Shown: piece after piece, positions 2,066-21,464 of the stretch | Layout of the letters: each line of letters opens with the position of its first letter | How positions within the stretch are numbered: position 1 is the stretch's first letter | Assembly: GCA_964199315.1 (NCBI GenBank) | Contig: OZ116710.1 | Span: 2,232,001-2,296,000 of the forward strand | Source: Orbicella franksi | Taxonomy: Eukaryota | Direction: 5' to 3' | Length of the DNA stretch: 64,000 nucleotides | Notes under the pieces: model-generated | What the model was told of the DNA's origin: nothing | The model's input: the letters and a program-made list of their open reading frames with translations, nothing else | Database searches by the model: none | Position numbers and translations under genes: made by a program

Positions 2066-2084
2066 CTCCGAAGTTATTGTTGAC

Positions 2085-2672
2085 TTAACTGGATTCAATG
2101 CACTGTATTTTATAATTGCTATTCAAGTTATTGTCCCAAAACTCTTGACCGCCAATGCAATAACGAATCGCAAATTTAATTTCTAGATCGACGGCAGAAT
2201 CCATTGGAACTGTAACACGAAACCAGAACTTATCCGTTTTTCCATCCATGCTTGAGGAGAGATAATCCGCCCAAATATCTCGATAGGACTTCCAGTTATC
2301 TGGCGTGAATCTCACTATCACTTCTTTAGCGAAACCTATGTTAGTTACTCGAATACTTCCAGTAACAACAGAGTAATGGCATACAATGCTTTCGAGGCAA
2401 ACATTCTGACTGTAAACACGTTCGAAGAAAGAGCTTGTTTTATAAGGCTCGGTAAAACTTGGAGACAAGTACTTCCCTAATGGTTGTGGACTTGGCAAAC
2501 TTCGGCTGTAGTTGTTGTTGACGTTCCACAAGTTACTGGTGTAAATGTTAACATAATCTTCTCCACTGTGTGGTGGAATTATTTTTACAAATTCGAGCGT
2601 GAAGCCAGCCGCATCTGCAAAGGAAACTCTCTTCTTGATCTTAGACATACAGATGCTGCTTATTTCATTCAT
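2085..2672 (-). CDS. PPP1R3: Glycogen-targeting PP1 regulatory subunit, copy 1 (195 aa, intronless CDS)
   Basis: KKRVSFADAAGFTL is an RVxF PP1-docking motif. CBM21 motifs: GSIRVTNIGFAKEVIVRFTPDNW, DKFWF, KFAIRY, EFWDNN..NY. First real ATG (MNEISS) is at 2672; the ORF-track start at 2699 is TTG. Symbol is family-level only. Confidence 0.93.
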   Translation of the reverse strand: MNEISSICMSKIKKRVSFADAAGFTLEFVKIIPPHSGEDYVNIYTSNLWNVNNNYSRSLPSPQPLGKYLSPSFTEPYKTSSFFERVYSQNVCLESIVCHYSVVTGSIRVTNIGFAKEVIVRFTPDNWKSYRDIWADYLSSSMDGKTDKFWFRVTVPMDSAVDLEIKFAIRYCIGGQEFWDNNLNSNYKIQCIESS

Positions 2673-3769
2673 CCGCTTTCGCTTGATACGATCCGTCAAG
2701 TGACTTTTGGATAAAGTGAAGCTTTGCGTTTACAATACATCTTTTTGAAGGGTTCACCCACAGAGCCACCGACTCAGCGCCGTGGCGTAACACGTTGGGG
2801 CTGGTACTGAGATACAATGCCTTTTGAACTCATAACTCCCATATAGCTAACACACAACGAGAGTTGTACAAAAATTACGAACGTCGCGACTAACTCATGT
2901 TAGTAAGCCCGAAAGGAGCTAAAATATGTCTGTTACTCTCAGGTGCACGACTCGCTTGCCACGCAGCAAAGATATTTTAAAATGCTGAAAACTAACAACC
3001 AAGAGGTTATCAGTTCATGAAGCAAAGGTCGCAAAACAATTCTTTGTGTTGACAAATCACACTCATCACTTATCACTAATCGCAACAGATCACTTTGAAA
3101 TAGATCTAGTGTATCCTGCAATATAGGAAAGAAGCACACTATTACGAACGATGTTGAAGTCGCATTTAAACAGGCGCAGAAATAATCAGTTTAGTTGTTA
3201 TTATCATATATATTAGGTTAATGTTCTGAAAGGATGTTTGTGATTTCGTTTTAAAAGTCAGAAATATGTTCAATTTCGTGGTGTGCGAACATGCGCATTT
3301 GATACGTTTTAAGTGCATAACAGGAAGTACTCATATCACACTTTTAAGTACTGCCACATGACTCACGATATCGCATTTTCATTGGCAACTGTTCAATTGA
3401 ATGGTTCCAACGTTCAAGCCTTCTCATTTCCATTTCACGGCATCTACTACAGACAACGGAAATTGGCTTTGGTTACCATGTCATCGGCCTTGCCTGTTTT
3501 TACCAGCTTACTTCAGCACCTGAATATGTAATACCCTCCTTCTCCTCCACACCCCACCCCCTCCACTCCGTTTAATGCTTTTTCAGTGAGAGGAAGTAAA
3601 CAAAAATAACAAAAACACAAGATATGGCCTATGTGTAGGCTCTCGTACGTTGCGGTACAAGCAAACAGGTAAGCCGAAGCGGGCCAGGCCCCGACTCGCT
3701 CCCCACGCCGACTCGTCTCTCGCGTCCTCTCCTTCTACGCGTACGGGTCTCCGCAGCCGTTGTTAAACC

Positions 3770-4790
3770 TTGGTAGAGTGGAGTTACATACTGGTAACTT
3801 AGTACACAGAAATAGTGCTAGCAGTTGTAAATGCTAGAGAAGTTTATATATGATGTTAATGAAAGTGGCATTGGAGGAATTTTTTGCATGGGAAAGTAGT
3901 AAAATGAGCTGATACAGTTTCAGCTGTGGAAAAGGGGTGGAACTAGAAAGTCATTGTGTTATTTGTAGAAGTAATAGGAGTTGCTCAAGTTTTGAATTTG
4001 ATCATAGTTGCAAAGACGTTTTAAACTGAGGTAGTGGTAGTGGAATAGTTATAGGGAACGGAGACTTAAAGTTGCCGCAATCTAAAATCAATCAAATCTT
4101 CGAATATCCGTTGGCTACATTCGGGCTATATATAAGTCAGCACGATCCGAAATATCTGACTCTTAACTTGCATGATTCCATTTCAGCCCTTCTTTCTATA
4201 TTGTTGGGACTCAAAATCCTGAATTAATTTTCATAATTACTAAATCTAGGGCTGTCACTTGTTTCACTACCAAAAACCATTTGTTCCATTTCTGCCACTA
4301 ATTCCACTACGGAGCCACCACAGCCAATACAACTAACTATATAACTTACTCCAACTCCACCAAACCAAACATTGTCACTACAACTATCACTTCCTCTCCT
4401 ACAATCAACCTCAACTCTATACCACATTTACTCCATAACTGCCAGAACAAGTCGATGTACCACTATCACCATTATGGCAATTCAATTGTCATCTGACTGC
4501 CATTATGTTCAATTAGCATAGGCACTAATTCCACGGGAACTAGCGCCCTAAATGCCTTTACAACTCAGTAGCGCTATCACTAAATCCACTACCTCTTACT
4601 ACAAGTAGTATAGTAGCAAATCATGAATTAAAGTTGAAGTGACCATTGCGCAGCTACTTCTACTGGAAAACGCACAGGTAGTTGTGTAGTTAATAACAGT
4701 AATGAAACAGTGGCAGCTGTTTGGTCATTGGTAGTTGAATGGCAATTGGGGAAGTTGCAGCAGCAGCAACAGTAGTAGTAGTATCGCAAC
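3770..4790. repeat. CA-rich satellite-like block with internal inversions
   Basis: GT-rich at 3770-4070, CA-rich at 4205-4610, GT-rich at 4610-4790. The 4270-4790 segment is homologous to 6700-7255. Confidence 0.7.
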
Positions 4791-5039
4791 GTTCGAAGAA
4801 AACAATAGTGAAGAGGCTGGTTAGTAGCTAGCGATATGACGTTCTGTCATGCACTATTTCATTGACAACGTAAATCACAAAGAAAATATTCACAGAGCGT
4901 CGTGCTTCAAAAAGAAATTACTTGACGGTATTTGTCTGACAATCATCGTGTCCATAAAAAAGACACTCAGTGACACTCATTTCGTCTGAAGCCGGGAAAG
5001 CCTTCTTAGGGTGTCTTAAGTCACTATTGACATGTTATA

Positions 5040-5410
5040 ACTGTATCGATTTTTTAATTTCAATTCAACTGAAGTTATTCAGTATCCCCAATGCAAGAAC
5101 GAATCGCAAGTTTAATTTTTAAATCGACCGCAAAATCCAATATAAAACCAGAACTTATCGGTTTTTCCATTCATGTATGCTTCACGAGAAACATTCCGCC
5201 CAAATATCTCAATAGGACTCCCAGTTATCTAGCATGAATCTCATCACATCTTAAGCGAGACCCCAGGCTATGTTTGTCACTCGAATGCTTCCAAAAACAA
5301 CAAAGTCATCTCATACAATGCTTTCGAGACAAACATTTTGACTTTAAACACGCTCGAAGAAAGAACTTGCACGATTCGGTAAATCACGGAGACAAGTTCT
5401 TTTTTCTCAG
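5040..5410 (-). pseudogene. PPP1R3: PPP1R3 pseudogene (copy 2), CBM21 part only, 5'-truncated
   Basis: Aligns by eye to copy 3 (8130-8530). Reads NLSP*FTESCK..FFERV*SQNVCLESIV*DDFVVFGSIRVTN..DNWESY*DIWA..GKTDKFWF, with several stops and frameshifts. The N-terminus and RVxF are replaced by CA-rich repeat. Confidence 0.88.
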
Positions 5411-5429
5411 TCTAGAACCAAACCGGAAA

Positions 5430-7255
5430 CGACCACTAACTGTGACACTTCTACAGCAACTACAACCACCAGCATTTCCATTACTACTAACTTAAACTAA
5501 ATCACGTCCACAACAACTACAACTATCACAATTCCATTACAACTAATAACTGCACGATTTTCTCTACAACTACAGCTATCACCAGTTAATTCCACCACCA
5601 CTAACTGCACCACTTCCACAACAACTGCAACTATCAGCAGTTCCACTAACACTAACTTCACCACTTCTACAACAACTACAACTATCACAATTCCACCACC
5701 ACTAACTGCACCACTTCCACAACAACTACAACTATCACAATTCCATTACAACTAATATGACTGCACCATGATCTCCACAACTACAGCTACCACCAGTTAA
5801 TTCCACCACCACTAACTGCACCACTTCCACGACTGCAACTATCAGCAGTTCCACTACCACTAACTTCCCCACTTCTACAACAACTACAACTATCACAATT
5901 CCACCACCACTAACTGCACCACTTCCACAACAACTACAAATAAAATAAATAAAAGACTTTATTTAACCTGAAAGGCCAATCAGTAATCACTGGATCACTG
6001 GTATTAACTGGCGATCAGCATTTACATATAAAATACAGCTATTCATAAAATTGTACTTTAAAAAAAAAAAAAAATCATGAAGATATATATAGTACACGTT
6101 TACATTAAAAATTACAACCATTGTGGAGATTATGTAAAAACAAGCATTTAAAAAGAAGAGCAGCAACAACAAACAGACAAGCAAAAAATTGAACCTAATT
6201 TACGGTACATACATGATTGATACGGTCTTGATCCATAAAATGCTTTAAAATATGTGTTTTAAACTTGGAAAGAGTAATTCCACTACCAGCAATTCCACTA
6301 CCACTAACTACCACTAACTCCACCACTTCTACAACAACTACAACTATCAACCGCATCATCTCCCCTAAAACAAAAACTGTATCACCAATTCCATTACCAC
6401 TAACTACACAATTTCACGACAACTACAGCTATGGGCAAGTCCACTAACTGTACTACTTCCCTTACAACTACAACTAAACTTCACAACAACCACTCTCTGC
6501 ACCACTTCCCGAGCAACTACAAGTATCACTAGTTCTACTGCATCTCCGCAACTAAAACTATCACTGGCTCCTTTACCAGCTGCATCATGGCCACTAAATC
6601 TGCAACCACTTATTCTACTGCCATGCACCAACTCCATCACTGTCAACGGCTACAAATGGAAATAACACCAATTCCACTATCACCAGCTGAGCTTCACCGC
6701 TGGTGATACTGAGTGGATTAGTGGTAGTTCCATTCGTAATGGCAGTGATGGAGTTGGTGCCAATACAACTAACTACATAACTTACTCCACCTCCACCAAC
6801 CCAGTCAGTGTCACTACAGCTATATCTCCTCTTTCCCTACTATCAACTTCTTAACCGACATTGCCCTTACAGCTACCTCAGCCGACAATAATTCCAATAC
6901 CACATTGTTACATAACTGCCAAAATCAAATACATGTACGACGGGCAGCAATAATTCCACTGTCACCTTAACACTGTCATTATATTCAGCTACCACATGCA
7001 GTGGCACAAAGTCCACTGCAACTAACGCCCTGACGTGACCTTTACAACGCAGTAGCGCTGACCACTATGCCACTTACTACAAGTAGTAGAGTTGTGGTAC
7101 AATGGTAATAGTACAGTTAAAGTTGAAGTGACCACTGTGTAGTTACTTCTCAGTACTGGAAAGTGTACAGGTAGTTGCGTGGTTAATAGTAATGAGGCAG
7201 TGTATTTGGTCAGAGGCAGTTGAATGGCAATTGGGGAAGTTGCAGTAGCGGTCGT
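5430..7255. repeat. CA-rich satellite-like block including a 50-bp tandem array at 5512-5940
   Basis: Monomer aacaactacaactatcacaattccaccaccactaactgcaccacttccac; the period is exactly 50 between 5671 and 5721. Interrupted by AT-rich DNA at ~5940-6270; strand switch near 7080. Confidence 0.85.
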
Positions 7256-7451
7256 AATATCTCTTTTAAACATGACCATATTGAATTATTACAGCATTGC
7301 ATAACTCTCGAAGTTGGTTGAATTACTTTATTTTATGTTGTTCATACGATGTTACTGAAAGATAAACTTCCCAGGAAAACGTTCATAATGGACACGAAAA
7401 ACTGGCCGACGGAAGCCGAGCTTCTTGGTAGTTTGTAAAGGAAGATATCTG

Positions 7452-7697
7452 AGGCCCCATTAGGGGTTTTAGGGATACGGGATATTTGCGAAAAAAAATT
7501 ATAGGGATACGGGATATTTCGGGGAAAAATTATAGGGATACGGCATATTTAGAAAAGAAAGGGTGGGATATCGAACGTCAAAGTTTTCTTTTTTGACAGA
7601 ATACAAACTACAGGAATTAATGGGATACGGGATATTTGGGACAAAAATTATTGGGATACGGGATATTCAGATCCCCCCCCCCCCCTTAATGGGGCCT
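7452..7697. mobile_element. MITE with internal GGGATACGGGATATT repeats
   Basis: TIRs AGGCCCCATTA(G)GGGG / CCCCTTAATGGGGCCT and five near-copies of gggatacgggatatt. It lies within an ~650-bp insertion absent from the paralogous flank at 4790. Confidence 0.8.
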
Positions 7698-8128
7698 TGT
7701 ATCTGGTAAACATAATGGCGAAAATCGTATCGATGTCATACTTGTCATTAATATTGCGTGAAATTGTTTTCTTAATCTGTCAAATACGTATTTCGGACAC
7801 TAGAAACAGGAAAGGAAATAAATTTCGTTCTCAATTTGATTTGACTATGAATACCGTGACTAATCTCCCGACAACGTGTCGGTGAAAATCGCAATTCTAT
7901 AGTTACATCGTACGAGAAAAACAATAATGAAGAGGCTGGTTACTAGCTAGCGATGTGACGTGCTGTCATGCACGATTTCATTGACAACGTAAATCACAAA
8001 GAAAATATTCACAGAACACCTTGCTTCAAAAAGAAACTATAGACGGTATTTGTCTCACTATCATCGTGTCCGTAAAAAGGTCACTTAGCCGCATCGGTAT
8101 GACTATATATTTTATATTTCGCTTGAAA

Positions 8129-8719
8129 TTATTGACATGTTTCAATGAATTGTATTTTATAATTTCTATCCAAGTTATTGTCCCAAAACTCTCGGCCGCC
8201 AATGCAATAACGAATCGCAAATTGAATTTCTAGATCAACCGGCGAATCCACTGGAACTGCAATACGAAACCAGAACTTATCCGTTTTTCCATCCATGCTT
8301 GACGAGAAATAATCCGCCCAAATATCTCGATAGGACTTCCAGTTGTCCAGTGTGAATCTCACTGTCAGTTCTTTAGCAAAGCCTATGTTTGTCACTCGAA
8401 TAGTTCCAGCAACAACAAAGTCATCGCATACAATGCTTTCGAGACAAACATTCTGACTGTGAACACGCTCGAAGAAAGAGCTTGTTTTGCACGGCTCGGT
8501 AAAACACGGAGACAAATTCTTTCCTCTCGGTCGTGGACTGGGCAAACTTCTGCTGTTGTTGTTGTTGACGTTCCACACGTTACTAGCACAAATGGTAGCA
8601 TTATCTTCGCCACTGCGTGTGGGAATAGTTTTCACGGATTCGAGCGTGAAGCCAGCCGCATCTGCAAAGGAAACTCTCTTCTTGATCTTGGACATAGAGG
8701 TGCTGCTTATTTCATTCAT
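8129..8719 (-). CDS. PPP1R3: Glycogen-targeting PP1 regulatory subunit, copy 3 (196 aa)
   Basis: KKRVSFADAAGFTL plus an intact CBM21; close paralog of copy 1. Homology with copy 1 starts only ~22 nt upstream of the MNEISS ATG (8719), so the longer 285-aa track ORF is probably not the true start. Confidence 0.93.
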   Translation of the reverse strand: MNEISSTSMSKIKKRVSFADAAGFTLESVKTIPTRSGEDNATICASNVWNVNNNNSRSLPSPRPRGKNLSPCFTEPCKTSSFFERVHSQNVCLESIVCDDFVVAGTIRVTNIGFAKELTVRFTLDNWKSYRDIWADYFSSSMDGKTDKFWFRIAVPVDSPVDLEIQFAIRYCIGGREFWDNNLDRNYKIQFIETCQ

Positions 8720-8880
8720 CCGCTTTCGCTTGATACGATCCTTCCACTGACATTGTGAGTCGGTCTGTCCGTCAGTCAAGATCTTAGCTAGAAATTCGAC
8801 GCCTACGCTTGTTCGCCTCGTTCTTTGTCTGGTGGTGTAAAAGCCGGTATCGCGTTGTTGTCGCTTCGGATTGAAATTGG

Positions 8881-8888
8881 TGACGTCA
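8881..8888. promoter_or_regulatory. CRE palindrome TGACGTCA upstream of PPP1R3 copy 3
   Basis: Perfect 8-mer ~160 nt upstream of the ATG. Confidence 0.55.
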
Positions 8889-11800
8889 TTGCCGGAACGA
8901 CGAACTTGAGCGAAGGCTACACACATATACACATAAAAAAAGTGTGCTACAGAACAGCTATCTTTGCAACCGAGAGAGGCAAACATTTCAGGGATTACGA
9001 ATGCAACACCACATAAACGGCTACAACTCAGCTATTGACCTGATTAATATATCTGGACCCTTCGTCGATTAATATGAGCGCGTTCCGAGTTACCTTTGAG
9101 TTACTATGTCTTCAGCTTCCTCGTACAATTGAACAGATTCAGTGACTTACAGACAGTAATTGTCAATTTAATACAGGCCGCTCTATTCAGTTCTAAGGTT
9201 CTCCGTATGCACCTAGGGCTGTGGAGCAGGTGAACAAGTAAAGAAAAATTTAAACCCTGTTCGACAGACAATGCCAGCAATCGGTTTCAACGGTTTCCAA
9301 AAACGTTAAACAAGGGATTTGAAACCTTGCTGGAAGGTCTCTGAGTTCATATCGCCTCATCAAAAGTATAAATGTTTATATGCACGGAAACATCCTTGTA
9401 TAAAATTAACTGACAGGAGTTGCAACTGATTGATCGATTTTGTGCGAATTTATTGGGAAACAGACTATAAAAATCAGAGGATTACGGTAACACTGTAGGA
9501 AATTTTTGGACTGAAAAAAAAAAAGATAATCTTTTTGGGTTGTTTTGTTGGTGTAATCGACTCTCATCTTTGATAACATGTGAGTGTCAATATAAAAACT
9601 GGCTGAAGATTTCTTACTTAAACTTGTTCCAGATACTTTGATAAGAGCTGAGAGTTCAGAGATGTTCGTTTTGATTTAGCCTCGCTCAATATAAATTCAA
9701 GATGTCAGTTCCTTTTTGCGATTGCTGCAATTTCTTTCAATGCTTCTTAATATAAGTTGTGTGAATATGATGGTTCATAGCAACAATGTATTCCTATTCT
9801 CCTATATCAGTCTTCTCGGGTCTGCTAATAATCCAGAGACAACATGTAAGATCGCTATTTGAAGAGACTGAGTCAGATCAGTGTAGATACTGAAAATCTC
9901 TTCAGTAGAGCACAGAAGTAAAGATATAGCAGTACGTTCATTCTCAGCTGACTTTAATACAGCTTTCGAATTTCTTTGTTAAATTGACCCTACCATAGTT
10001 TCGCATGTGGTATCAGCCTACAGCCAGTAATAAAATGTTCTTTAGAGTGTACGATGAGACGTCATCGTTTTCTTGACAGTACTTTGTTTTCTGATGTAGT
10101 TCTGCATGCGATCACTTGTCTCTCCATTGCTGCCGTTATTCTGGGAAGTTGCTAGTTTTCCCTCGTCACATTTGAAGGTTCATGTTTGTTTTTCTTGTAC
10201 CTTTACTGACAAGTCGTCAGTTGACATTGCTAGTACTGTATTTATTGTGTATTCATTTTGTTTCAATTGCCGCACGTATTCCGACACCGTTTTCATGAGT
10301 CTAAGGACAATTTTTTCATATTTCGAATTGATTGCTTTCTTGCGAAAAAATTGGACGTCGATTGCACTTCGGAAGGGATACTATCTCACACGGTTTTGAC
10401 TCGGCTATCAAAGGCTTGGTCGCTTCATGGTCGTTCGTGACGAAACCACGTGGAACGATCGATATAATAGAGAAAGCAAACCACAACGGTAACGGCACCA
10501 AACAATAGGCTTAATGAGTACGGCAATGGCTGTGCACGTGCGTTAGCAACCTTTGTACCTTTCCTCTGGAAAACAATAACGTGAAATGACTAAGTTCTGC
10601 GTATTTTGGAGAACGCAAAGGATGGTGGCGAACTTTTTGTCGTCTTATTTGGAATTGAATGCTGGCGTTACATATTTAGCTTGAGCTTGTTCTGAGACCA
10701 CTAGGCACGCTGAACAGATCTAGACAATTGCGAAATTCGAAGGTAAAATTAAATTCATTTTTTTTACCAGGCGTTGTCCCTGGGGTCTCCGTCATCAATG
10801 CTTAAGCTCTCTACTAATTCCACTTGTACCGCGAGAAATTTTTACGTTGCATTAATTATATTGGCTGCCGGATCTTTGCTGTTCTACGCTTAATTTCACG
10901 GTATAACAAATATTCCTGTTTTCTACATTTATGACTCATGGAGCATAATAAAGTGTAATCAAAAGTGGCTAATGAGTTGGAATTTTATTTTAACTCTAAA
11001 AAGATATTAACTGGCTATTTATCCAAGCCTATGCAGTTTTTCCTGTTCGGTCTGCAAGGCCAAGTATCACAGTATTTGGCTCCAACTAATTAAATTTAAG
11101 AAAACCAAATGACATAATTCATCGATTACAATTTACATGCATTTCCATAAGTTGTTTTCTGAGTCGGATCTGTGATTATAATCCTTGAGTACATTGTCTT
11201 GCCTGACCAACGTTTTTAGTCTCTATTTCTTGTCATCGACATACTGTAGGACCTATGGTTTGGTTTTAATACTCGTTTAAAAAACTGAGAAGATCAAACC
11301 CCCGGGATAATTTTTTTCCAGCCAGCAGTTTTTTTCTGCTAAACAAAAACATTAAGAAAATGTTTTAGCGAGGCAACAGATGTTACATAATAGCTAAGTT
11401 GTTCGTTTACAATTCCACACGGAAGGTCGGTGTTGAGGATAGTTGCACCAAATTTTTCTCCTAGATGTTGTTTTCAATTGCCTTGTGTTCAACGAAGCAT
11501 GTTCTACTAATTATAGTGGAACCCGGTCCAAGATGACGAACCTCAGGGGAAAAAATGTAAAAAAGCCACCAAATTGTCCGCGCTCTCTTCAGTTATTTTA
11601 AAACGCATAGACTGACTTGTCACGTAACTCCGCAAAGCGAAAACATCAACCCACAGACGTTTGGCATCATGACAAATTCGTTATATCTGGGCTGCTCCAT
11701 TTTCTCTTGATATTGGCATTCCTTTTTACGGTTTCGTGTAAATGCAAGGCAAAGAAAACAGTTAATAGTGAAATTTTAAATTTCACAATCATTTCAATAT

Positions 11801-11891
11801 ATTTGTACTCATCGAGGTTTGGTCAAATTCGCTCGCACGAAGATTACCATCTTTCCTCAGTTCAGTTTGTTCTGTTTCTGTAACGATGTTT

Positions 11892-12497
11892 CTATAATTG
11901 TTCAGGAAAGACTTCTAAACACTGAATATGATAATTTTTTCTGTCATTATTGTCCCAAAATTCTTGGTCGGAGGCGCGATAACAAATTGCAAACTCCATG
12001 TGTCGATTTACTTCAAAGTCATGAGGTACAGTGACACGAAAGCTAAACTTGTCTGTTTTTCCATCCGTACAAGAGGACATATAATCAGCCCAAATGTCCC
12101 GATACGTTGCCCAGCCGTTGAATGTGAATCTCACCGTAACCTCTTTAATGAAAGATAAATTTGTCACTCGAATAAGCCCAGTGACAACAAAGTTTTCGCA
12201 CGCAATGTTCTCCAAGCAGACATTCTGGCTGTAAACTCGCTTCATAAAATTGTCTGTTTGTTCTGCAGGTCGAACGAAGCACGGGAACAGACATTTTATC
12301 CGTCTCCTTGGCAAATTTTCGTTGATATCACAATGACTTTTCCTCGCACCGATCGCGGAGCATAGGTTGTCATCGCTGCTACATGGAGTAATGATTTTAA
12401 CGAATTCAAGCTTGAGTCCAACCAGGTCCGCAAAGCAAACTTTTTTCGTCGCGGAGGTTGGACTGGGTAGCCCAGAGCCTTGTCCGTCCGCCTTCAT
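11892..12497 (-). CDS. PPP1R3: Glycogen-targeting PP1 regulatory subunit, copy 4 (201 aa)
   Basis: KKVCFADLVGLKL (RVxF variant). CBM21: GLIRVTNLSFIKEVTVRFTFNGW, DKFSF, EFAICY, FWDNNDRKNY. Confidence 0.93.
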   Translation of the reverse strand: MKADGQGSGLPSPTSATKKVCFADLVGLKLEFVKIITPCSSDDNLCSAIGARKSHCDINENLPRRRIKCLFPCFVRPAEQTDNFMKRVYSQNVCLENIACENFVVTGLIRVTNLSFIKEVTVRFTFNGWATYRDIWADYMSSCTDGKTDKFSFRVTVPHDFEVNRHMEFAICYRASDQEFWDNNDRKNYHIQCLEVFPEQL

Positions 12498-12565
12498 TGC
12501 TGTGCAACTCTCGGACGATTAGTTCTCTAATAGGTGATGCTGTTGTTCGGGCGAATTCCGACAGA

Positions 12566-13251
12566 TGACGTCAGCTTCGGAACCTAAGATTGAAGGTGGA
12601 ACGAAATTTTCCACCATAAACGACTTATATTCTTGCTAGCACACTCCATAAAAAGAAATTGATGTTTTTTTTTAAAGTGGGAACCAGTTGTTTTTCATTG
12701 CTTCTATATAATTTTAACCAGCCAGAGCGAAACAAGAATTGACAACCAGAGCAATGTTTATCCAGGGAGCTCGCCGAAGTAGTTTTGAGCAGAGCTCAGT
12801 AAAGTCACAATAATACGAGATTTTTAAAAGAAAATTGAAAAATTGTTACTTACGGTTATCCCAAAGCTTTCCTTTCACTTTTAAAACAATTGAGACAACA
12901 TTCCCCAGATCATGGAAAGCAAATGTTCTCCGGACAGGCATTGGCACACTTTGCGGCACGTGCGAGAAATGAATCGGGTTTTATAACCATGGTTTGGAGG
13001 TCAACAGTGACGTCAGTAAAAAAAAACGTGTCATAAGTCATGGAGATGGAAACAACTGCGGGAAAGGAATGTAATGGAACTTCGATGCTTCCACCTAATT
13101 TCCTTTCATGTGAACACCCGCTATAGTCGAAGCAGTCGCATCTAACAATTCGTTAACTTTCGTGGAGAAAAAGTTAAATTATATGAAAAAAAGCAATGTC
13201 CATATATGCAAATTTTAATTCAGTTTCAAACAGCGACAATATGTGACGTCA
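12566..13251. promoter_or_regulatory. Three CRE palindromes upstream of PPP1R3 copy 4
   Basis: TGACGTCA at 12566-12573, 13008-13015 and 13244-13251. Confidence 0.6.
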
Positions 13252-14830: not shown

Positions 14831-14972
14831 AGGAAGCGGTAGAGCACTCAAGAAGTAGGGAAAAACACTCGACTACGTCTCGTGTTTTCCCCTACACTTC
14901 TTTCGTGCTCTACCGCTTCCTGCGTGCTTTACAACAGAACAGAGCACAGTCGAGGCTTCTTTATTTGTTAAA
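14831..14972. repeat. Short hairpin-forming interspersed repeat
   Basis: AGGAAGCGGTAGAGCAC (14831-14847) pairs with GTGCTCTACCGCTTCCT (14905-14921), with further internal pairing. Confidence 0.65.
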
Positions 14973-15659
14973 CTGTTTTTGAGTGCCACGATTTGAACAC
15001 GTGTATTCTTCAAGATTTGACAGTTTTTGACACTGATTGTGATGTCCATATTTATTTAATTTTCAATTCTAAATTTCTAATCTGTACAACAAAGGCGATT
15101 TCCGAGTTCGTTGAATTGTACTGTTAGAATATGTCTTATCTTCTTTGTTTCAACTAAATGTTTAATACCACGAATTTCGAAAAATATTCTCTAACATATA
15201 AATTTACATTTCATATAAATAACTGATTGATATCTTTAAGGGAATATGATTTTGTGTTCGCTTTTAGCATAAATTAAACACTAACTCAAAAGTTCGTGAA
15301 TACCGTAAAATAATGTAGTTATTTTAAGGAAATATCGTCCTTTATATACTTTGCGGAGAGAAACAGCCAATTTCCCTCTCTCTTCAGAAACGTCTTGAGA
15401 CAACGAATACGGAAATACAACAAGTGTATTCTTGGTAACAGACTAATTTCAGAGGTGAATTATGTTGACCTGAAATTATGGTAGATATGTACCTGACAAC
15501 TCTTTGCACAAATAATATTTGGAGTTGTAGACTCTAGCTACTTTGCTTGCAAACACAAAATCCTTCCTATAGCTCTGAACGGTTTGTTGCTCAAAATGAC
15601 AACAAGGAGAACTCGACGTGGACTACTCAGTTAATATATGCACAGCAAGGTCAGGCAAA

Positions 15660-16265
15660 TTATTTATCGACGATGGTGTGAAGAAAACATTCCGCACAAT
15701 AATTTCGCTTAAAATTGTTGTCCCAGTATTCTTTTCCTGCCGTACAATATCGAATGGCGAACTCAAGCTTTCCCCCAACATCCAAGTCTTGAGGAATCGA
15801 AATTCTGAACTGAAATCTGTCGGTTTGACCATCCGATGATTTCGGCACATAGTCTGCCCACACATCACGATAGCTGTGCCATCCGTCCACCGTATATCTC
15901 GCTGTTACTTCTTTAGCGAAGGCAATGTTTTTTACTTTTACAGTCCCAACCATCGCAAAGCCACAGAAAACAACGTTCTCCAGACACACATTTCGCTCAA
16001 TCACGCGATCAATAAACTTTTCTTCGGACGCAGGTTGGGTGAAGCAACAACTCATTCGTTTTAGGTGAATCGGCGTTGAAATATGGCTTAAAATATCCAA
16101 CTTTTTATCAAGCGATAGGTCCTCCTCGCTGTTTGCCGGCGTGATCATTTTCACTGACACCAAATCCTGGCCGTCAAAGTCTGCAAAGTGAACTCGCCGT
16201 TTCGAATCCAAACTCGTTGGCGAGTGTAGCGGCGAGTTCGCCGTATTCTCCTGTTGTTCTTTCAT
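15660..16265 (-). CDS. PPP1R3: Glycogen-targeting PP1 regulatory subunit, copy 5 (201 aa from first in-frame ATG)
   Basis: RRVHFADFDGQDL. CBM21: GTVKVKNIAFAKEVTARYTVDGW, DRFQF, EFAIRY, YWDNNFKRNY. The track start at 16346 is TTG; the first in-frame ATG is 16265 (MKEQQE). Confidence 0.92.
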   Translation of the reverse strand: MKEQQENTANSPLHSPTSLDSKRRVHFADFDGQDLVSVKMITPANSEEDLSLDKKLDILSHISTPIHLKRMSCCFTQPASEEKFIDRVIERNVCLENVVFCGFAMVGTVKVKNIAFAKEVTARYTVDGWHSYRDVWADYVPKSSDGQTDRFQFRISIPQDLDVGGKLEFAIRYCTAGKEYWDNNFKRNYCAECFLHTIVDK

Positions 16266-16478
16266 TACCTTCACTGATACATTTCCCCCCAAACAAGGAA
16301 AGCAAACGTTATTATTGGAATCCAGGACTAGTTTAAGCGTGAACAACCCGTTGATCGTTACATTATGTCATGGCGGCTTTTGACTGCCGCTCCTGTACGC
16401 TAGCATATTTACATTCTTCCTCCGCAGTGTCCGTGACTTAGTGCATGTATGACTGAATCGAATCTCTTTCAGAAAGCG

Positions 16479-16486
16479 TGACGTCA
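16479..16486. promoter_or_regulatory. CRE palindrome upstream of PPP1R3 copy 5
   Basis: TGACGTCA ~215 nt upstream of the ATG, plus a TACGTCA half-site near 16529. Confidence 0.55.
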
Positions 16487-19400
16487 TTTGCATGTTTATG
16501 AGGGATCCCGTCAAGACTGTCCATCACTTACGTCAACAACCCAAGAAACCACAAAACCACAAAGCGATACTGTCCAGAATTCACATTCACTGTGCAGAGA
16601 AGATAAGTTGTACTCTCATTTGACCGAGCAAAGAAAAACTGGAAGTTCTAAATATATCTTTTGAGTGTAGAAGTCAACGGAATATTGATTTAACTTTTTG
16701 TTATCGAGTTATCAAATCTGTTTCTCTCAGACGTCTATGAAATGTCGGACCATTTCCTTTTACGGGATCGAGAACAATTATCTGAGAAGAAAATGTCAAT
16801 TTTTGTTGATGGAAGATTCACCTTAGCAGAAGTGTCCGCATGAGTTCCACTTCCGGTCCTTTCCTTCCCTCTAGATGACTACTAGATGGCGTGTTTACTG
16901 TGGCATCCAAATCAGGAGGAAAAAATAGACTCATTGGTTAATAAAGGTGATAATAGTTTATTTACAGCACAAAAGTGAAAGCTACTTACATAACCTTCAG
17001 CATTTGTCTGTAGAGAACCTCTCTCCCTTGAGGATCGTACACTGTATGTTAATTTTCAGATTATTATAATAAATATGCTTAAAATATACTTCAAGGACTT
17101 CATACAGAGTGGACTGAGCATACCGGCAGATTTGTCTGCTTTCAAATTATGTGTGTGTTCACAGGATATGTATTTAAGTGCAACAATGTGCCTGTAATAA
17201 TTAAGAGTGGGTTTTACTAAATTATGCTTGCTTGATGTGATGCTACACTGTTTCAGTTCAGCAGGGCTCATAATTTCTATTTCACACAGAAGGAAAGGTG
17301 AAGCCCTTACTATCCCTATTAAGAAAATATTTGAAGGCAGGAATCACAAAAGAAAAAGAAACCAATCAACTTTCAGGAGAAGCAATGCATTGCAACCTGC
17401 ACCACCAGCAAATAATAATTATCAAGTGCTTGGATTAACAGAGCTAATCAGAAAGCTAGGGGTAAATATGAAGGACAAGTCAAAAACAAAAAGCGGAGAA
17501 ACATTGTCGCATGTGAATCAGGGGATCAAGTAATTAAAACCAAATGATTTGCAAGTTATACTCAGTGTTTTCAAGCCAGTCATCCAGGATTATACACTCA
17601 AGAAACTGGAACAAATAACAATGTTATTTTCTTTTAATTTTTTAATTTTAATTTTTGTGTTTTTGTCACTGAAAAACACCAAATAAAATCACTGTGATAC
17701 CATGTTACTGTATATCTTTTCATATTTTGCATGTCCAGTTGCCATTATAAAATAATGCAAAATTTTGACTATTGTTGATTTCCATTGCATTATACTCATA
17801 ACTGTACAACCATATATTTCCTCAATTAAATACACATCTCCCATAAGTGCCCCTCCATAACCAGCTGGGCTCAGTTAAACTTCTAGCTAAAGTCCATGTC
17901 TCTCAGCCCTAAAAACCACTAAGAAGGTGGATAATCCACATGTGATAAAATGTTATTGTCCAACATCAAACATGATTTACGGTCAAAACCAGCCAAGAGT
18001 AACTCCAAAATTATAACCACATAAAAAATAATTTAATAAACATATTTTGATTTTCGTTCTTTATTTAACACTATTCTAATTCCATTCCAAGGTGAAGTTT
18101 TCATTGTGCAATTAAACTTAAAATTTAAATGTTGATTAGGATAATGTCTGTTTTCAACAGCCATGTGAGAATGTTTAGGGATTTTAAAAGGTCAAGAACA
18201 GTTTTTTGCCAAGTTTCTGTTCTCTATTTATCATTTTGACCCCCTTGAACTCAGTTGAAAAACATGCCTCACATCTATTTTTGTAATAAAAATAGTGTGA
18301 AAGTCAAAACAACAATACTGCATATACTTTTTAGAAGAGCTTAGCAGTGCAAATTTGGAGTAAGTTCTTAGGTATCATTTAAATCAATATTGAATGACTC
18401 CATTCATACAGTGTAATCAACAATATTGCAATGCAGATTGAAGCCAAATTTGTTAACATATTCATTACATTATATGTTATTGAGAGGAATTATACTTGAC
18501 TGGTTTTGACTTTAACCATGAAACATGGAAAGTGACAATTAGTAGAAAGAGCTGAAGTGCTTCAATTGAATAATACCAATAAGGTGTTTAATCCAAATAG
18601 GTTCAGATTGTTCGCTTTAAATTTTAGAAGTTCAAAGTATCAATGCTTCTCATTCAACCATCAAAACAATGATGGTCTAAGACAAGTTTCTCCGTTTCTA
18701 AACCATCATTGACAGTGTAGAACAGTCTGTTCAATGATAAAGAAAAATTCATGCAAGAGCAATGTAAATCTGGTGCATGATGATTAAAATAGAGACATGG
18801 TTTGAAGTCTAGTCAAACGACTATGCTCTTGTCTAGCCAACAGTTCTTTTTCAATGTACCATAAATGCCGGCAGATAAGCTGCACCTAATTACTCAATAT
18901 TTTCTCAACAAATTTAGGATGTGGCCAATGTCTGGGAGAACATCTGGACAGCGTGACATAAATTTGCATAAATTAATGCTTTCCATTGAAACTAAGTCTG
19001 TATGGCAAACTAAAAAGAACTTCATCACACTATACCAGAGTACGCATTGATCATTGTGTAAATTGTAAGTTTGGTGGCTTACATGGGTTTACATTCCATG
19101 AATCAACGAAATATGTAAGCTTATACATGTAACACATCTTTCTTAAGACTCCACTTCTGATTTATTTTGATATCTTTTAAAAATCCTTTTTTCCAAAATT
19201 TGCGTTCCCAAACTCAGGGTGCAGCTTGTCTACAAGTACGGCTTATCCACCAGGGTTTATGGTAATTACGTTGTGGTTGAGTGAGTTCATCAGCCATACA
19301 TTTTTTAAGCAATGTTTTGAAATGTCAAGCAAAGAATCCAAACCAAGCTGAAGCTAAAACTTACTCTTAATTTGACTGTAATACCTACTATGCAGCGCTG

Positions 19401-20624
19401 TATTTACAGTAAGCACAATGCTAAACCCTAAAACAACTTTCCTCATCCAAGGCAAATCTGATCTAAGGAGCCCTTAAACAATAATCAGTAAGTAGGTACT
19501 ACTAATACTTGTTAACTACAAATTACTGTTCGGAAAAGCTCATGTTATACACTTGCCAGCACTAGGAGAGAGGAGGAGATGCATTTTGGTTGAACCTGTC
19601 ACTCATAACATCATTATGGTGTGTCAAAATGTGGTATGTACGTGTTAAAACGGTGCAATAGGTGCAGTAACAAAGTAAATAAGGGCTGTTGACCATGTGT
19701 CACCCTGCTGTAATGCCCTCATACTGACACGCAGACCACTCAGTATCTGTGGCATTACTTGGTTTATGCTTCACATGTACAGTACATGTGTATTTGTCAT
19801 CAAACTTGCCATAACATCTCTGTAAACTTTCAATGACTCATCAGCAATTTTTTGTTGCTTTATCAGCAAAGTTGAGAAATTTAGCCATGTGGGTAGACAA
19901 GTTTGCTGATTAAAACTTTGCTCAAGGATCATCATACATAATATAGATTAAGACACATTTTCTTTCTATCTACATCTGTAACACTCAATGATGCATAGAA
20001 GTGCTGAAAAATGCAGAATAAAAACATATTTTTTGAATAAACCCTAAATGTTACAGTCCTGTGGTGGCTAATCCCCAAAATGCATGTTGCTATTAACCTT
20101 TTTAGAACTCTTAATCCTTATTATTTGTATGTTTCTTATAGCCAGTTATAAAACATGGCAAGTCGAACAAGTGGTAATGTTCCTTGGAATGCTGATCCCA
20201 CAGCCATTTGATAGATGAAATTTAAAAGCTTAAAAGGTTAAAAAATATGCGATCACTTGCAGATGTCATGTTTTAAAACAGATATTATGATCTTACAATA
20301 AACCCACAACACAGAGCACAGGGACGAGCTCTAACTCACGCAATATGAGACTTGTGACATGTTTATCTCGCTTGATGGGTTTGCATAAGAACACATTATC
20401 ATAATATCTTTCAGTTTCAAGATTGGACCCCAAAAATTTACACTGTTCTTTCTAGTGTTATGGCTTTGGTTTTTTCTATATCTTTTTCCTGTTGATGGCG
20501 AAGTGGAGAAATAAAACCTACTACAAAAGGCCATGCATGTGTTACTTTCAGGCCCACAATGGATGTGCCATTGTCCTTTCCACTTTTGTCCTGGAACAGA
20601 ATACCGATGTTCGCTTCGACCTGT

Positions 20625-21464
20625 TTACCGTGTACAGTTAAAAAGGTTTGCCATTCGATTGAAACCACCGTTCGAAGCAGGAGCCTCTCGACACTCGATG
20701 CGATAGTTCTGACTGCTGTTATTGTCCCAAAACTCCATACCTTCACCCCGAAAGCGAACTGCAAACTCCAATACTCCTCCGGAAGCGAGAAAATATTCTG
20801 GAAGTGTTAGCGCAAACGAAAATCTGTCCGTTGCACCATCGTTTGATTCAGGCACATAAACCGCTTGCAAATCACAAGATGAAATCCAGGCATCTAATGT
20901 GTACCTCACACAGACGCTTTTATGAAAGCAAATGTTTTTAACCTTTATCGTTCCCCAGATAGAGTTTTGCGAAGCCACAGCGTTTTCCAGACACACAGTC
21001 TGAATCTCTAGTTTGTCTCTGAAGTCTTCCGAAGCAACCGGTTGTGCGAAACATACATGTAATGTCTTCTTCGCTCGCTGGAGCTCCCTTTTGGTCATTT
21101 GTAATGCCACGTGTATGTTATATTCATCATCACTGTAAACAGAAACAAGCGGCTTCCCGCAGCCATCCGCAAACTGCACGGATTTTTTCCTCGGTGCAGG
21201 AAGCGAGTGATGCTTGCGAAGAATAGAATGGCAGCCGTTTTCACCATCATTGCCATCCAATTCATCGTCTTCTGAAAACGGAGGGAACACCGAATTCACT
21301 CTTCTCAGATGGGGCCAATCGACCATGTTGACACAGCGACTTTCGCTGCTATCACAATCAATTCCGTTGCTCATTTCCACCGCTCCCGTCGCTAGATGAT
21401 TTTGTTCAACTCCGCATCGCGCCGGCGGTGGAAATAAAACGAGCGCTGAACGCAGGGCACGCAT
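20625..21464 (-). CDS. PPP1R3: Glycogen-targeting PP1 regulatory subunit, copy 6 (279 aa, most canonical)
   Basis: SILRK (SILK-like) followed by RKKSVQFADGCGKPL. CBM21: GTIKVKNICFHKSVCVRYTLDAW, DRFSF, EFAVRF, FWDNNSSQNY. Longest N-terminus of the array. Confidence 0.94.
   Translation of the reverse strand: MRALRSALVLFPPPARCGVEQNHLATGAVEMSNGIDCDSSESRCVNMVDWPHLRRVNSVFPPFSEDDELDGNDGENGCHSILRKHHSLPAPRKKSVQFADGCGKPLVSVYSDDEYNIHVALQMTKRELQRAKKTLHVCFAQPVASEDFRDKLEIQTVCLENAVASQNSIWGTIKVKNICFHKSVCVRYTLDAWISSCDLQAVYVPESNDGATDRFSFALTLPEYFLASGGVLEFAVRFRGEGMEFWDNNSSQNYRIECREAPASNGGFNRMANLFNCTR

What the first reader, a model, noticed from the sequence alone, without database searches (positions are those of the whole stretch)
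2085..21464. Six-member tandem array of glycogen-targeting PP1 subunits
Seen: five intact intronless RVxF+CBM21 ORFs and one pseudogene, all on the minus strand within 19.4 kb. Four are minimal ~200-aa proteins with little more than the PP1 dock and the glycogen-binding domain. Known: PPP1R3 proteins recruit PP1 to glycogen to activate glycogen synthase and inactivate phosphorylase, and vertebrate paralogs are dispersed rather than clustered. Inference: a lineage-specific expansion of glycogen control. If the host is a symbiotic coral, it could tune storage of algal photosynthate by tissue or time of day. I do not know of a description of such a cluster.
Basis: partly seen in the sequence, partly recalled or inferred. 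Interest (0 to 1): 0.8.

Follow-up and report, generated by a model that had tools for sequence, protein, structure and literature searches.

The report
Conserved coral array of PP1 glycogen-targeting genes
A stony coral (Orbicella) carries a real tandem row of small genes that should tether protein phosphatase 1 to glycogen, but non-symbiotic relatives have the same row, so it is an old hexacoral feature and not an adaptation to algal symbiosis.

Summary
Five intact single-exon RVxF+CBM21 ORFs and one 5'-truncated, frameshifted pseudogene lie on the minus strand at 2085-21464. A seventh member (c0, 177 aa) sits about 1 kb before the window start. The genome has 10 intact CBM21 genes in all.

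The genome is Orbicella: c0 is identical to the RefSeq protein XP_020631339.1, so these genes are already auto-annotated.

The array lies downstream of TBC1D32/BROMI, and this arrangement is conserved.
- The azooxanthellate deep-sea coral Desmophyllum pertusum has BROMI-c5-c4-c3-c1/2-like-c0 in the same order.
- The non-symbiotic anemone Actinia tenebrosa has BROMI-c5-c4.
- Only the c1/c2 split and the pseudogene are young.

All copies are under purifying selection (pN/pS 0.13-0.49). Assemblies of RNA runs hold the c1-c2 stretch. Each type keeps its own conserved RVxF/WDNN signature. Copy c1 is predicted to dock PP1 through RVSF plus the adjoining VK motif (score 0.88, best control 0.61).

All five perfect CRE palindromes of the window lie upstream of c2, c3 and c4, at positions conserved in Desmophyllum.

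The symbiosis reading is not supported. This is a new member of a known kind, of moderate interest. The scan had already noted the CREs and the RVxF variation on this same stretch.

The parts
2085..2672 (-). c1: intact 195-aa PPP1R3-like gene (KKRVSFAD + CBM21), counted from the conserved ATG; the mechanical ORF reaches 2699
   Evidence: conserved MNEISS start. pN/pS is 0.22 against its orthologue in L023 (p=6e-8). Its 1.8-kb surroundings are held at 26-70% by 14 RNA runs. Predicted to dock PP1 through residues 13-19 and 24-35.
4787..5412 (-). Pseudogene: 5'-truncated, frameshifted copy of c2 with c2's 3' flank; no RVxF part; a further flank piece lies at 4521-4764
   Evidence: tblastn pieces fall in three frames. 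blastn gives 76% identity to window 8532-7906. There is no orthologous copy in the related species' contig L023.
8129..8719 (-). c2: intact 196-aa gene (KKRVSFAD + CBM21); an open frame continues to 8986 (285 aa) but that extension is not conserved
   Evidence: pN/pS is 0.49 against its orthologue (p=0.016). Public JGI and Logan contigs are 99% identical and colinear.
11892..12497 (-). c3: intact 201-aa gene (KKVCFAD, WDNND + CBM21)
   Evidence: It is 99.5% identical to XP_020631336.1 of Orbicella faveolata. It aligns with PTG residues 70-264 of PDB 7QM2 at E=4.7e-27. pN/pS is 0.29.
15660..16265 (-). c4: intact 201-aa gene (RRVHFAD + CBM21); the mechanical ORF reaches 16346
   Evidence: Positional orthologues exist in L023 (93.5%), Desmophyllum (85%) and Actinia tenebrosa (49%), and they form one clade with 99/96 support. 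pN/pS is 0.13-0.14.
20625..21464 (-). c5: intact 279-aa ORF (KKSVQFAD + CBM21), the member next to TBC1D32; orthologues start at the position of M31 (21374), which gives 249 aa
   Evidence: Its clade has 100/100 support and includes Actinia, Actinostola, Acropora and Desmophyllum. pN/pS is 0.24.
8881..8888 (.). Perfect CRE palindrome TGACGTCA, 162 nt upstream of the c2 ATG
   Evidence: 5 in the window, 0.68 expected, 0 of 100 shuffles reach 5.
12566..12573 (.). CRE 69 nt upstream of the c3 ATG, inside a roughly 40-nt block conserved in the relative, in Desmophyllum and in the paralogue on contig C4
13008..13251 (.). Two further CREs (13008-13015 and 13244-13251), 511 and 747 nt upstream of c3
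   Evidence: The relative has CREs at 509 and 727 nt, Desmophyllum at 728 nt.
16479..16486 (.). CRE 214 nt upstream of the c4 ATG; AATGACGTCAC is invariant in three species
   Evidence: The relative has it at 205 nt, Desmophyllum at 175 nt.
25710..31935 (-). 3' exons of TBC1D32/BROMI, the conserved upstream neighbour of the array
   Evidence: Exon-sized tblastn matches to the BROMI gene of Desmophyllum and to the 1320-aa upstream gene of Actinia. Pfam BROMI and BROMI_C are recorded on the Desmophyllum gene calls.

Best explanation
The stretch is an old, conserved tandem family of functional PPP1R3-type regulatory subunits of protein phosphatase 1 in a stony coral (Orbicella). In gene orientation the order is TBC1D32, c5, c4, c3, c2, pseudogene, c1, c0.

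Inferred mechanism, by homology. Each protein is close to the minimal working core of mammalian PTG. An N-terminal RVxF strand and the adjoining hydrophobic (VK-type) motif dock on PP1c. The C-terminal CBM21 holds the holoenzyme on glycogen. There PP1 activates glycogen synthase and inactivates phosphorylase.

Shown here:
- The five types (c5, c4, c3, c1/2, c0) are not redundant recent copies. Each has positional orthologues in other stony corals. c5 and c4 also have them in a sea anemone.
- Each type is under purifying selection.
- Each type keeps its own signature. The c1/2 type has RVSF, the serine that PKA phosphorylates in mammalian GM and GL to release PP1. c0 has RVTF. c3, c4 and c5 have residues that cannot be phosphorylated. 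The full WDNND substrate motif is common only in the c3 type and the related dispersed copies on contigs C4 and C15.
- c2, c3 and c4 have conserved cAMP-response elements in their proximal promoters.

Inferred meaning. The family divides control of glycogen between different inputs: transcriptional cAMP/CREB-type control, phosphorylation of the dock, and possibly different substrates or cell types. This is a general hexacoral trait that predates reef symbiosis and is independent of it.
For: Domains and motifs:
- CBM_21 at E 1e-28 to 1e-30 in all five ORFs.
- In all 10 paralogues the V and F of RVxF, the Leu equivalent to PTG Leu95, the Val at +11 and WDNN are invariant. These match the PP1-contacting residues named in PMC9582199 and PMC6235537.
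- c3 aligns end to end with the crystallised PTG 70-264 core (7QM2_B, E=4.7e-27).

Docking model: c1 with a PP1-beta catalytic core scored ipSAE 0.88 against a best control of 0.61.
- That mark was reached by 51 of 78 solved complexes and 2 of 108 mismatched pairs.
- The three runs agree in at least 50% of contacts, and the partner's pLDDT is 71.
- The interface is c1 residues 13-19 (KKRVSFA) and 24-35 (including VK).

Synteny:
- Desmophyllum: BROMI, c5, c4, c3, c1/2-like, c0.
- Actinia tenebrosa: upstream gene, c5, c4.
- A related coral contig: c4, c3, c2, c1.
- A distant scleractinian contig: c3-like, then c1/2-like.

Tree, ultrafast bootstrap / SH-aLRT: c5 100/100, c0 100/100, c4 99/96, c1/2 100/99.

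Selection: pN/pS is 0.13-0.49, with Fisher p from 0.016 to 1e-30.

Clade-specific motifs over 182 public homologues: RVSF or KVSF in 21 of 22 c1/2-type, RVTF in 23 of 25 c0-type, WDNND in 32 of 54 c3-type.

Transcription:
- RNA runs hold 30-61% of window 2000-9100 and 26-70% of 1500-3300, polyA libraries included.
- The exact c0, c3, c4 and c5 proteins occur in JGI, Logan and ENA assemblies.

CREs: 5 observed against 0.68 expected, all upstream of c2, c3 and c4, with conserved positions and footprints.
Against: - No biochemical test exists for any coral copy.
- The docking pass may reflect the model's memory of the solved GM, GL and PTG complexes. One control, with PP1 replaced, still scored 0.61.
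- The terminal acidic residue of the WDNN(D/E) substrate motif is missing in c0, c1, c2, c4 and c5, so recruitment of glycogen synthase or phosphorylase may differ or be weak.
- The RNA evidence comes from assembled contigs only.
- One public contig (L025, 5.3 kb) spans c3, the spacer and c2. If it comes from an RNA library, it points to DNA carry-over or read-through transcription.
- Only two non-symbiotic genomes were examined.
- Octocorals and medusozoans were not surveyed.
Confidence: 0.85

Rival explanations
1. One reading: the array is a lineage-specific expansion driven by algal symbiosis, which tunes storage of photosynthate.
For: - The host is a zooxanthellate coral (Orbicella).
- The youngest events add to the ancestral set: the c1/c2 duplication, the pseudogene, and possibly the dispersed c3-like copies on contigs C4 and C15.
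- The c1/2-type copy of azooxanthellate Desmophyllum is broken by at least 5 frameshifts or stops in the assembly.
- A CBM21 host gene is strongly rhythmic in symbiotic Acropora tenuis (PMC11271600).
Against: - All five types, in the same order next to BROMI, are present in azooxanthellate Desmophyllum pertusum. The c5-c4 core is present in non-symbiotic Actinia tenebrosa.
- The A. tenuis gene also oscillates in constant darkness, which makes it clock-controlled and not driven by photosynthate.
- The Desmophyllum assembly has indel errors. Its c3 frameshift is absent from an independent contig, so loss of c1/2 there is uncertain. It is also a single case.
Confidence: 0.1
2. The copies are functionally redundant duplicates kept only for dosage, or are drifting towards loss, with no division of labour.
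For: - One copy has already decayed.
- c2 is the most relaxed (pN/pS 0.49).
- The young C15 pair is not distinguishable from neutral (0.64, p=0.18).
- All copies share the same two-part architecture.
Against: - The types have stayed distinct since before the Orbicella-Desmophyllum split, and c5 and c4 since before the coral-anemone split.
- Each type has a conserved RVxF x-residue and WDNNx residue of its own.
- Promoter content differs: c2, c3 and c4 have CREs, while c0, c1 and c5 have none.
- Long retention under pN/pS 0.13-0.31 is not expected for redundant copies.
Confidence: 0.12
3. These are carbohydrate-active or starch-binding proteins unrelated to PP1. The Acropora tenuis paper labels its CBM21 gene a glycoside hydrolase.
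For: CBM21 also occurs in fungal glucoamylases, and PMC11271600 uses that label.
Against: - The proteins are 177-279 aa and have no catalytic domain. Pfam finds only CBM_21 and CBM53.
- All carry RVxF plus the adjoining motif at the spacing seen in GM and PTG.
- The best solved relatives are PPP1R3C, PPP1R3B and PPP1R3A.
- The docking model uses exactly these motifs.
Confidence: 0.03

Closest known systems
Mammalian PPP1R3C (PTG) and its crystallised PP1-binding plus CBM21 core (PDB 7QM2, 7QF7; PMC9582199)
   Same: - RVxF, then the hydrophobic motif, a linker and CBM21, in the same order and spacing.
- c3 aligns over residues 12-194 with PTG 70-264 (E=4.7e-27).
- c3 keeps WDNND.
- Like PTG, c3, c4 and c5 have a residue that cannot be phosphorylated at the x position of RVxF.
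   Different: - The coral proteins lack PTG's N-terminal 70 residues and its C-terminal tail. At 177-201 aa they are essentially the minimal core.
- No SALK/SILK motif was examined or claimed.
- The genes sit in a tandem array.
Mammalian PPP1R3A (GM) and PPP1R3B (GL)
   Same: - c1 and c2 (and C15a) have K/R-R-V-S-F. This is the serine that PKA-type signalling phosphorylates in GM and GL to release PP1 (PMC9582199).
- The Lys at the second position of the hydrophobic motif (VK) is as in GM and GL (PMC6235537).
   Different: - There is no membrane anchor or long C-terminus as in GM.
- The GL-type C-terminal phosphorylase a site was not tested.
- Phosphorylation of the coral serine is untested.
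The seven dispersed human PPP1R3A-G paralogues
   Same: A multi-member family whose members differ in regulation (PMC9582199).
   Different: - From my own knowledge, the human genes lie on different chromosomes.
- Here 6 of 10 intact genes and one pseudogene lie within 23 kb, and two more form a 9-kb tandem pair on contig C15.
- The coral types arose by independent duplication within Hexacorallia. In the tree they group together against the mollusc PPP1R3B-like outgroup, with the gene on contig C2 branching first.
RefSeq models of Orbicella faveolata (XP_020631336.1 'PPP1R3C-like', XP_020631339.1 'PPP1R3D-like')
   Same: They are identical (c0) or 99.5% identical (c3) to the genes here, and both lie on one 928-kb scaffold.
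   Different: These are automatic names only. I found no published account of the cluster, its synteny or its types.

Membership tests
PPP1R3 (glycogen-targeting regulatory subunits of PP1) | CBM21 carbohydrate-binding module | tested here: met
   PF03370 scores 97-106 bits against a cut-off of 28.9 in all five window ORFs. The genome holds ten such domains.
PPP1R3 (glycogen-targeting regulatory subunits of PP1) | RVxF PP1-docking motif N-terminal to the CBM21 | tested here: met
   The motifs are KKRVSF (c1, c2), KKVCF (c3), RRVHF (c4), KKSVQF (c5) and KKRVTF (c0). V and F are invariant in 10 of 10 paralogues and conserved in each clade.
PPP1R3 (glycogen-targeting regulatory subunits of PP1) | Second hydrophobic (PhiPhi) motif 11-12 residues after the RVxF Phe (GM 79-VK-80; PTG Leu95, His99, Phe101) | tested here: met
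   The Val at +11 and the Leu at +8 are invariant. Position +12 is Lys in c1-c4, as in GM and GL, Tyr in c5 and Val in c0. Reference residues are from PMC6235537 and PMC9582199.
PPP1R3 (glycogen-targeting regulatory subunits of PP1) | WDNN(D/E) motif for binding the substrates glycogen synthase and phosphorylase (PMC4482762) | tested here: inconclusive
   WDNN is invariant in 10 of 10. The final acidic residue is present only in c3 and the copy on contig C4. It is Leu in c1 and c2, Phe in c4 and c0, and Ser in c5. The paper reports that the acidic residues matter in PTG.
PPP1R3 (glycogen-targeting regulatory subunits of PP1) | Sequence homology to solved PPP1R3 structures across both the dock and the CBM21 | tested here: met
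   c3 against 7QM2_B (PPP1R3C) gives E=4.7e-27 over 183 residues. 2EEF (PPP1R3B) and 2M83 (PPP1R3A) are also hit.
PPP1R3 (glycogen-targeting regulatory subunits of PP1) | Physical binding to the PP1 catalytic subunit | tested here: met
   This is in silico only. c1 with a PP1-beta core scored ipSAE 0.88 against a best control of 0.61. That mark was reached by 51 of 78 solved complexes and 2 of 108 mismatches. The runs agree in at least 50% of contacts and the partner's pLDDT is 71. The interface is the RVSF and VK segments. The pass may come from the model's memory of solved homologous complexes, so it shows likeness, not binding.
PPP1R3 (glycogen-targeting regulatory subunits of PP1) | Binding to glycogen and stimulation of glycogen synthesis | not testable with these tools
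   This needs glycogen co-sedimentation and glycogen synthase and phosphorylase assays.
PPP1R3 (glycogen-targeting regulatory subunits of PP1) | Conservation of the site II carbohydrate-contact residues of PTG CBM21 | not tested
   I did not extract the residue list from PMC9582199. Only domain-level homology was shown.

The most novel reading that the evidence does not exclude
The five conserved types form a division-of-labour module for glycogen control in animals that lack liver- and muscle-type organs.
- c2, c3 and c4 would be switched on transcriptionally through conserved CREs (cAMP or clock input).
- The c1/2 type, and perhaps c0, would be switched off after translation by phosphorylation of the RVSF or RVTF dock.
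- Only the c3 type and its dispersed relatives (contigs C4, C15) would recruit substrates through a full WDNND motif.

A sharper version: the RVSF-bearing c1/2 type is dispensable without symbionts, since it looks degenerate in azooxanthellate Desmophyllum but is duplicated in Orbicella. That would link this one type, not the whole array, to handling of daily photosynthate pulses.
Probability: 0.2. Interest if true: 0.6.

Novelty: new member of a known kind. Interest (0 to 1): 0.35.

Why it matters
Glycogen is a main short-term carbon store in cnidarians. Its daily build-up and use are central to coral energy budgets and to recovery from bleaching.

This work shows that hexacorals keep a syntenic set of five distinct minimal PP1 glycogen-targeting subunits. 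Each has its own conserved dock residue and promoter content. That gives coral physiologists named, orthology-resolved genes to follow in diel, bleaching and single-cell data. At present the same genes carry inconsistent automatic names such as '3B-like', '3C-like', '3D-like', 'glycogen-binding subunit 76A-like', or 'CBM21 glycoside hydrolase' in PMC11271600.

It also removes a tempting but wrong inference, that the cluster is an adaptation to symbiosis.

The proteins are natural minimal versions of PTG, which may be convenient for structural work.

Tried and rejected
- **Read laying.** Nothing was laid, so there are no depth, strand or transcript-end data. In later local BLAST scripts that covered them they were masked with N.
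- **Shared 3' end of four c2 contigs at about 7673-7703.** I first took this for a polyA site. It coincides with a G13 homopolymer, and no AATAAA or ATTAAA lies nearby. It is an assembly break and no evidence of a transcript end.
- **The 285-aa form of c2.** Rejected as the real protein. The N-terminal extension differs in length and sequence between orthologues, the Met of MNEISS is invariant, and a CRE lies inside the extension.
- **Retroposition as the origin of the dispersed c3-like copy on contig C4.** Not favoured. The promoter block with the CRE was copied too, which points to duplication at the DNA level.
- **The frameshift in the Desmophyllum c3 orthologue.** Rejected as a real lesion. 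An independent contig that is 97% identical has an intact 204-aa ORF.
- **An orthologue of the pseudogene in the related species.** None was found.
- **The look-up of encoding contigs for the Acropora muricata c5 orthologue.** Not on record.
- **Exact-sequence look-up of c1 and c2.** Not in the collection.
- **Literature searches for a described cluster.** Only incidental mentions turned up.

Full report
**1. Observation**

The ORF listing finds five minus-strand ORFs at 2085-2699, 8129-8986, 11892-12497, 15660-16346 and 20625-21464. I call them c1 to c5 by rising coordinate.
- All five hit Pfam CBM_21 at 97-106 bits against a cut-off of 28.9.
- All carry an RVxF-type motif N-terminal to the domain.
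- tblastn with the five proteins finds a sixth, broken copy at about 5027-5413, split over three frames.
- blastn shows this copy is a 5'-truncated duplicate of c2 together with c2's 3' flank. It is 76% identical and has no RVxF part.
- It has no orthologous counterpart in a related species' contig.

**2. The array is larger than reported, and the genome is Orbicella**

A six-frame search of the whole 497-Mb assembly with PF03370 gives ten domains.
- Five are in the window.
- One lies about 1 kb before window base 1. This is c0, a 177-aa ORF with KKRVTFAD at G000:C13:2230518-2231051.
- Two form a tandem pair 9 kb apart on contig C15.
- Contigs C4 and C2 hold one each.

c0 is identical to XP_020631339.1 ('PPP1R3D-like', Orbicella faveolata). 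c3 is 99.5% identical to XP_020631336.1 ('PPP1R3C-like'), on the same 928-kb scaffold. The C4 copy is 99.5% identical to another O. faveolata protein. The genes are therefore already modelled automatically in RefSeq.

**3. Gene models**

Alignment with orthologues shows an invariant Met at MNEISS for the c1/c2 type. The 89-residue extension of the c2 ORF is not conserved in length or sequence. It also contains a CRE and is most likely 5'UTR.

With eukaryotic ATG starts the products are:

| copy | length |
|---|---|
| c0 | 177 aa |
| c1 | 195 aa |
| c2 | 196 aa |
| c3 | 201 aa |
| c4 | 201 aa |
| c5 | 249-279 aa |

Public JGI, ENA and Logan contigs carrying c2 or c3 are 98-100% identical to the genome and colinear with it, with no splice. 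The coding regions are therefore single exons. Introns in the 5'UTR cannot be excluded.

**4. Synteny and age**

The 3' exons of TBC1D32/BROMI lie at 25710-31935 on the minus strand, directly upstream of c5 in gene orientation.
- **Desmophyllum pertusum.** This is a cold-water coral without algal symbionts (my own knowledge). In assembly GCA_029204205.1 the order is BROMI, c5 orthologue, c4 orthologue (85% identical), c3 orthologue (75%), a c1/2-like element, a low-complexity ORF, and the c0 orthologue (72%).
- **Actinia tenebrosa.** This is a non-symbiotic anemone (my own knowledge). A 1320-aa gene whose last exons match the same window exons is followed by a c5 orthologue (60%) and, 5.4 kb on, a c4-type gene (49%). 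The next 10 kb hold nothing more.
- **A related coral contig (L023).** It has c4 (93.5%), c3 (88%), c2 (85%) and c1 (88%) in order, with colinear non-coding similarity of 75-85%.
- **A much more distant scleractinian contig (L024).** Its c3-type gene groups with Montipora foliosa. It has a c3-like gene followed 5.6 kb on by a c1/2-like gene.

A careful maximum-likelihood tree of 47 proteins recovers positional orthology. Support is given as ultrafast bootstrap / SH-aLRT.
- c5 clade, including both anemones: 100/100.
- c0 clade: 100/100.
- c4 clade, including the second Actinia gene: 99/96.
- c3 plus c1/2 superclade: 100/98.
- c1/2 clade, including the L024 gene: 100/99.
- c2 pairs with its L023 orthologue at 99/92, so the c1/c2 split predates that species split.

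The five types are thus old. c5 and c4 predate the coral-anemone split. c3, c1/2 and c0 go back at least to the common ancestor of Orbicella and Desmophyllum. Only the c1/c2 duplication and the pseudogene are younger.

**5. Constraint**

Nei-Gojobori and YN00 estimates and site counts give the following.

| comparison | pN/pS | Fisher p |
|---|---|---|
| c1 vs L023 orthologue | 0.22 | 6e-8 |
| c2 vs L023 orthologue | 0.49 | 0.016 |
| c3 vs L023 orthologue | 0.29 | 9e-5 |
| c4 vs L023 orthologue | 0.13 | 4e-11 |
| c4 vs Desmophyllum | 0.14 | 2e-30 |
| c5 vs Desmophyllum | 0.24 | 1e-25 |
| c3 vs Desmophyllum | 0.29 | 2e-14 |
| c0 vs Desmophyllum | 0.31 | 2e-12 |

None of the array copies evolves neutrally. 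c2 is the most relaxed. The young C15 pair is not distinguishable from neutral (0.64, p=0.18).

**6. Transcription**

- Fourteen RNA runs hold 30-61% of the sampled words of window 2000-9100. The RNA and DNA holders of that stretch together come from 13 studies.
- Fourteen RNA runs hold 26-70% of window 1500-3300 around c1.
- Both sets include polyA-selected libraries.
- The exact c0, c3, c4 and c5 proteins occur in JGI, Logan and ENA assemblies.

This is evidence from contigs only. Strand, level and transcript ends therefore remain unknown. I worked beside those places from then on.

One 5.3-kb public contig spans c3, the spacer and c2. If it is from an RNA library, it warns of DNA carry-over or read-through transcription.

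The common end of four c2 contigs near 7690 is a G13 homopolymer, not a polyA site.

**7. Mechanism**

- c3 aligns over 183 residues with the crystallised PP1-binding plus CBM21 core of human PTG (7QM2 chain B, E=4.7e-27). It also aligns with the CBM21 domains of PPP1R3B and PPP1R3A.
- The residues that PMC9582199 and PMC6235537 name as filling the PP1 grooves are invariant in all ten paralogues at the right spacing. These are the V and F of RVxF, PTG Leu95, and the Val of the VK motif 11 residues after the Phe. Position +12 is Lys in c1-c4, as in GM and GL.
- A docking model of c1 with a PP1-beta catalytic core (identity of the core checked) scored ipSAE 0.88 against a best control of 0.61.
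  - That mark was reached by 51 of 78 solved complexes and 2 of 108 mismatched pairs.
  - The runs agree in at least 50% of contacts, and the partner's pLDDT is 71.
  - The confident interface is c1 residues 13-19 (KKRVSFA) and 24-35 (through VK) against the C-terminal beta-strand region of PP1.
  - Homologous complexes are solved, so this shows likeness and not proof of binding.
- The WDNN of the substrate-binding motif (PMC4482762) is invariant. The final acidic residue is kept only in c3 and the C4 copy.

**8. Signs of division of labour**

Among 182 public homologues assigned to their nearest type, each type keeps its own residues.
- The c1/2 type has RVSF or KVSF in 21 of 22.
- c0 has RVTF in 23 of 25.
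- c4 has RVHF or RVQF.
- c5 has VQF or VHF.
- c3 has mostly KVCF.
- WDNND is common only in the c3-related types.

In GM and GL the serine at this position is phosphorylated downstream of adrenaline or glucagon and releases PP1 (PMC9582199).

All five perfect TGACGTCA palindromes of the 64-kb window fall inside the array, against 0.68 expected and with 0 of 100 shuffles reaching five. They lie 162 nt upstream of c2, 69, 511 and 747 nt upstream of c3, and 214 nt upstream of c4.

The same positions recur in other species.

| gene | Orbicella | L023 | Desmophyllum |
|---|---|---|---|
| c4 | 214 | 205 | 175 |
| c3 | 69, 511, 747 | 77, 509, 727 | 112, 728 |

The proximal c3 and c4 motifs sit in conserved footprints, although synonymous sites between Orbicella and Desmophyllum are heavily diverged (dS about 0.65-2.0). 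The C4 paralogue and the L024 c1/2-like gene have one too. c0, c1, c5 and the Actinia genes have none.

**9. Literature**

I found no account of the cluster. Two papers bear on it.
- PMC11271600 reports a host 'CBM21' gene of Acropora tenuis. It is among the most abundant rhythmic, clock-controlled transcripts in constant dark and in light-dark cycles, and is damped by heat. The paper calls it a glycoside hydrolase. In an animal a CBM21-only protein is far more likely a PPP1R3.
- PMC12010470 reports a PPP1R3B-like gene induced by hypoxia in Nematostella.

**10. Verdict**

The identification as PP1 glycogen-targeting subunits is well supported in silico. The proposed tie to symbiosis is not supported.

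The finding is a conserved hexacoral gene array of a known family. It is already auto-annotated but not described. Its interest lies in clean orthology, minimal architecture, type-specific dock residues and conserved CREs.

Noticed in passing
window 8881-8888, 12566-12573, 13008-13015, 13244-13251, 16479-16486: All five perfect CRE palindromes (TGACGTCA) of the 64-kb window lie upstream of c2, c3 and c4, against 0.68 expected. Their positions and footprints are conserved in a related coral and in Desmophyllum. The scan had noted them before on this same stretch (s1-214225).
   Followed up: yes
window about 4200-7300 (tandem unit of 208 nt at 5503-5939); L020:15916-18674: A strand-asymmetric, low-complexity minisatellite (GC skew -0.32 over 4-6 kb) fills the spacer between the pseudogene and c2 and gives long spurious Val/Glu-rich ORFs. 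Desmophyllum has a similar repeat, called there as an 889-aa 'gene', between its c1/2-like element and c0.
   Followed up: partly
L020:14929-15530 (Desmophyllum pertusum): The c1/2-type copy of this azooxanthellate coral runs from a Met through KKRVYFAD to the C-terminal NY motif, but it is broken by at least five frame changes and stops. The same assembly has an indel error in c3 that an independent contig lacks, so the pseudogene status is likely but unproven.
   Followed up: partly
window 60776-63030 (-): The G+C-rich end of the window (52-54% against about 39%) holds a non-LTR retrotransposon. One ORF has an Exo_endo_phos endonuclease domain and the next a reverse transcriptase (RVT_1, E=2e-32).
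   Followed up: partly
G000:C15:18545540-18554840 (L010, L006); G000:C4:25307115-25307420 (L004); G000:C2:14909960-14910268 (L005): Four further intact single-exon CBM21 genes lie outside the array. Two form a young tandem pair of c3-like genes (89% identical, RVSF against RVLF). One is a c3-like copy that kept the CRE promoter block. One is a divergent gene that branches at the base of the coral family in the tree; its place next to the mollusc outgroup was flagged as a possible long-branch join.
   Followed up: partly
window 2094-2707 and 8141-8754: c1 and c2 are 88% identical over the coding part only. Their flanks are no longer alignable by blastn, although the older-looking pseudogene still aligns with c2's 3' flank at 76%. 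Gene conversion limited to the coding region, or turnover of the flanks, would explain this.
   Followed up: no
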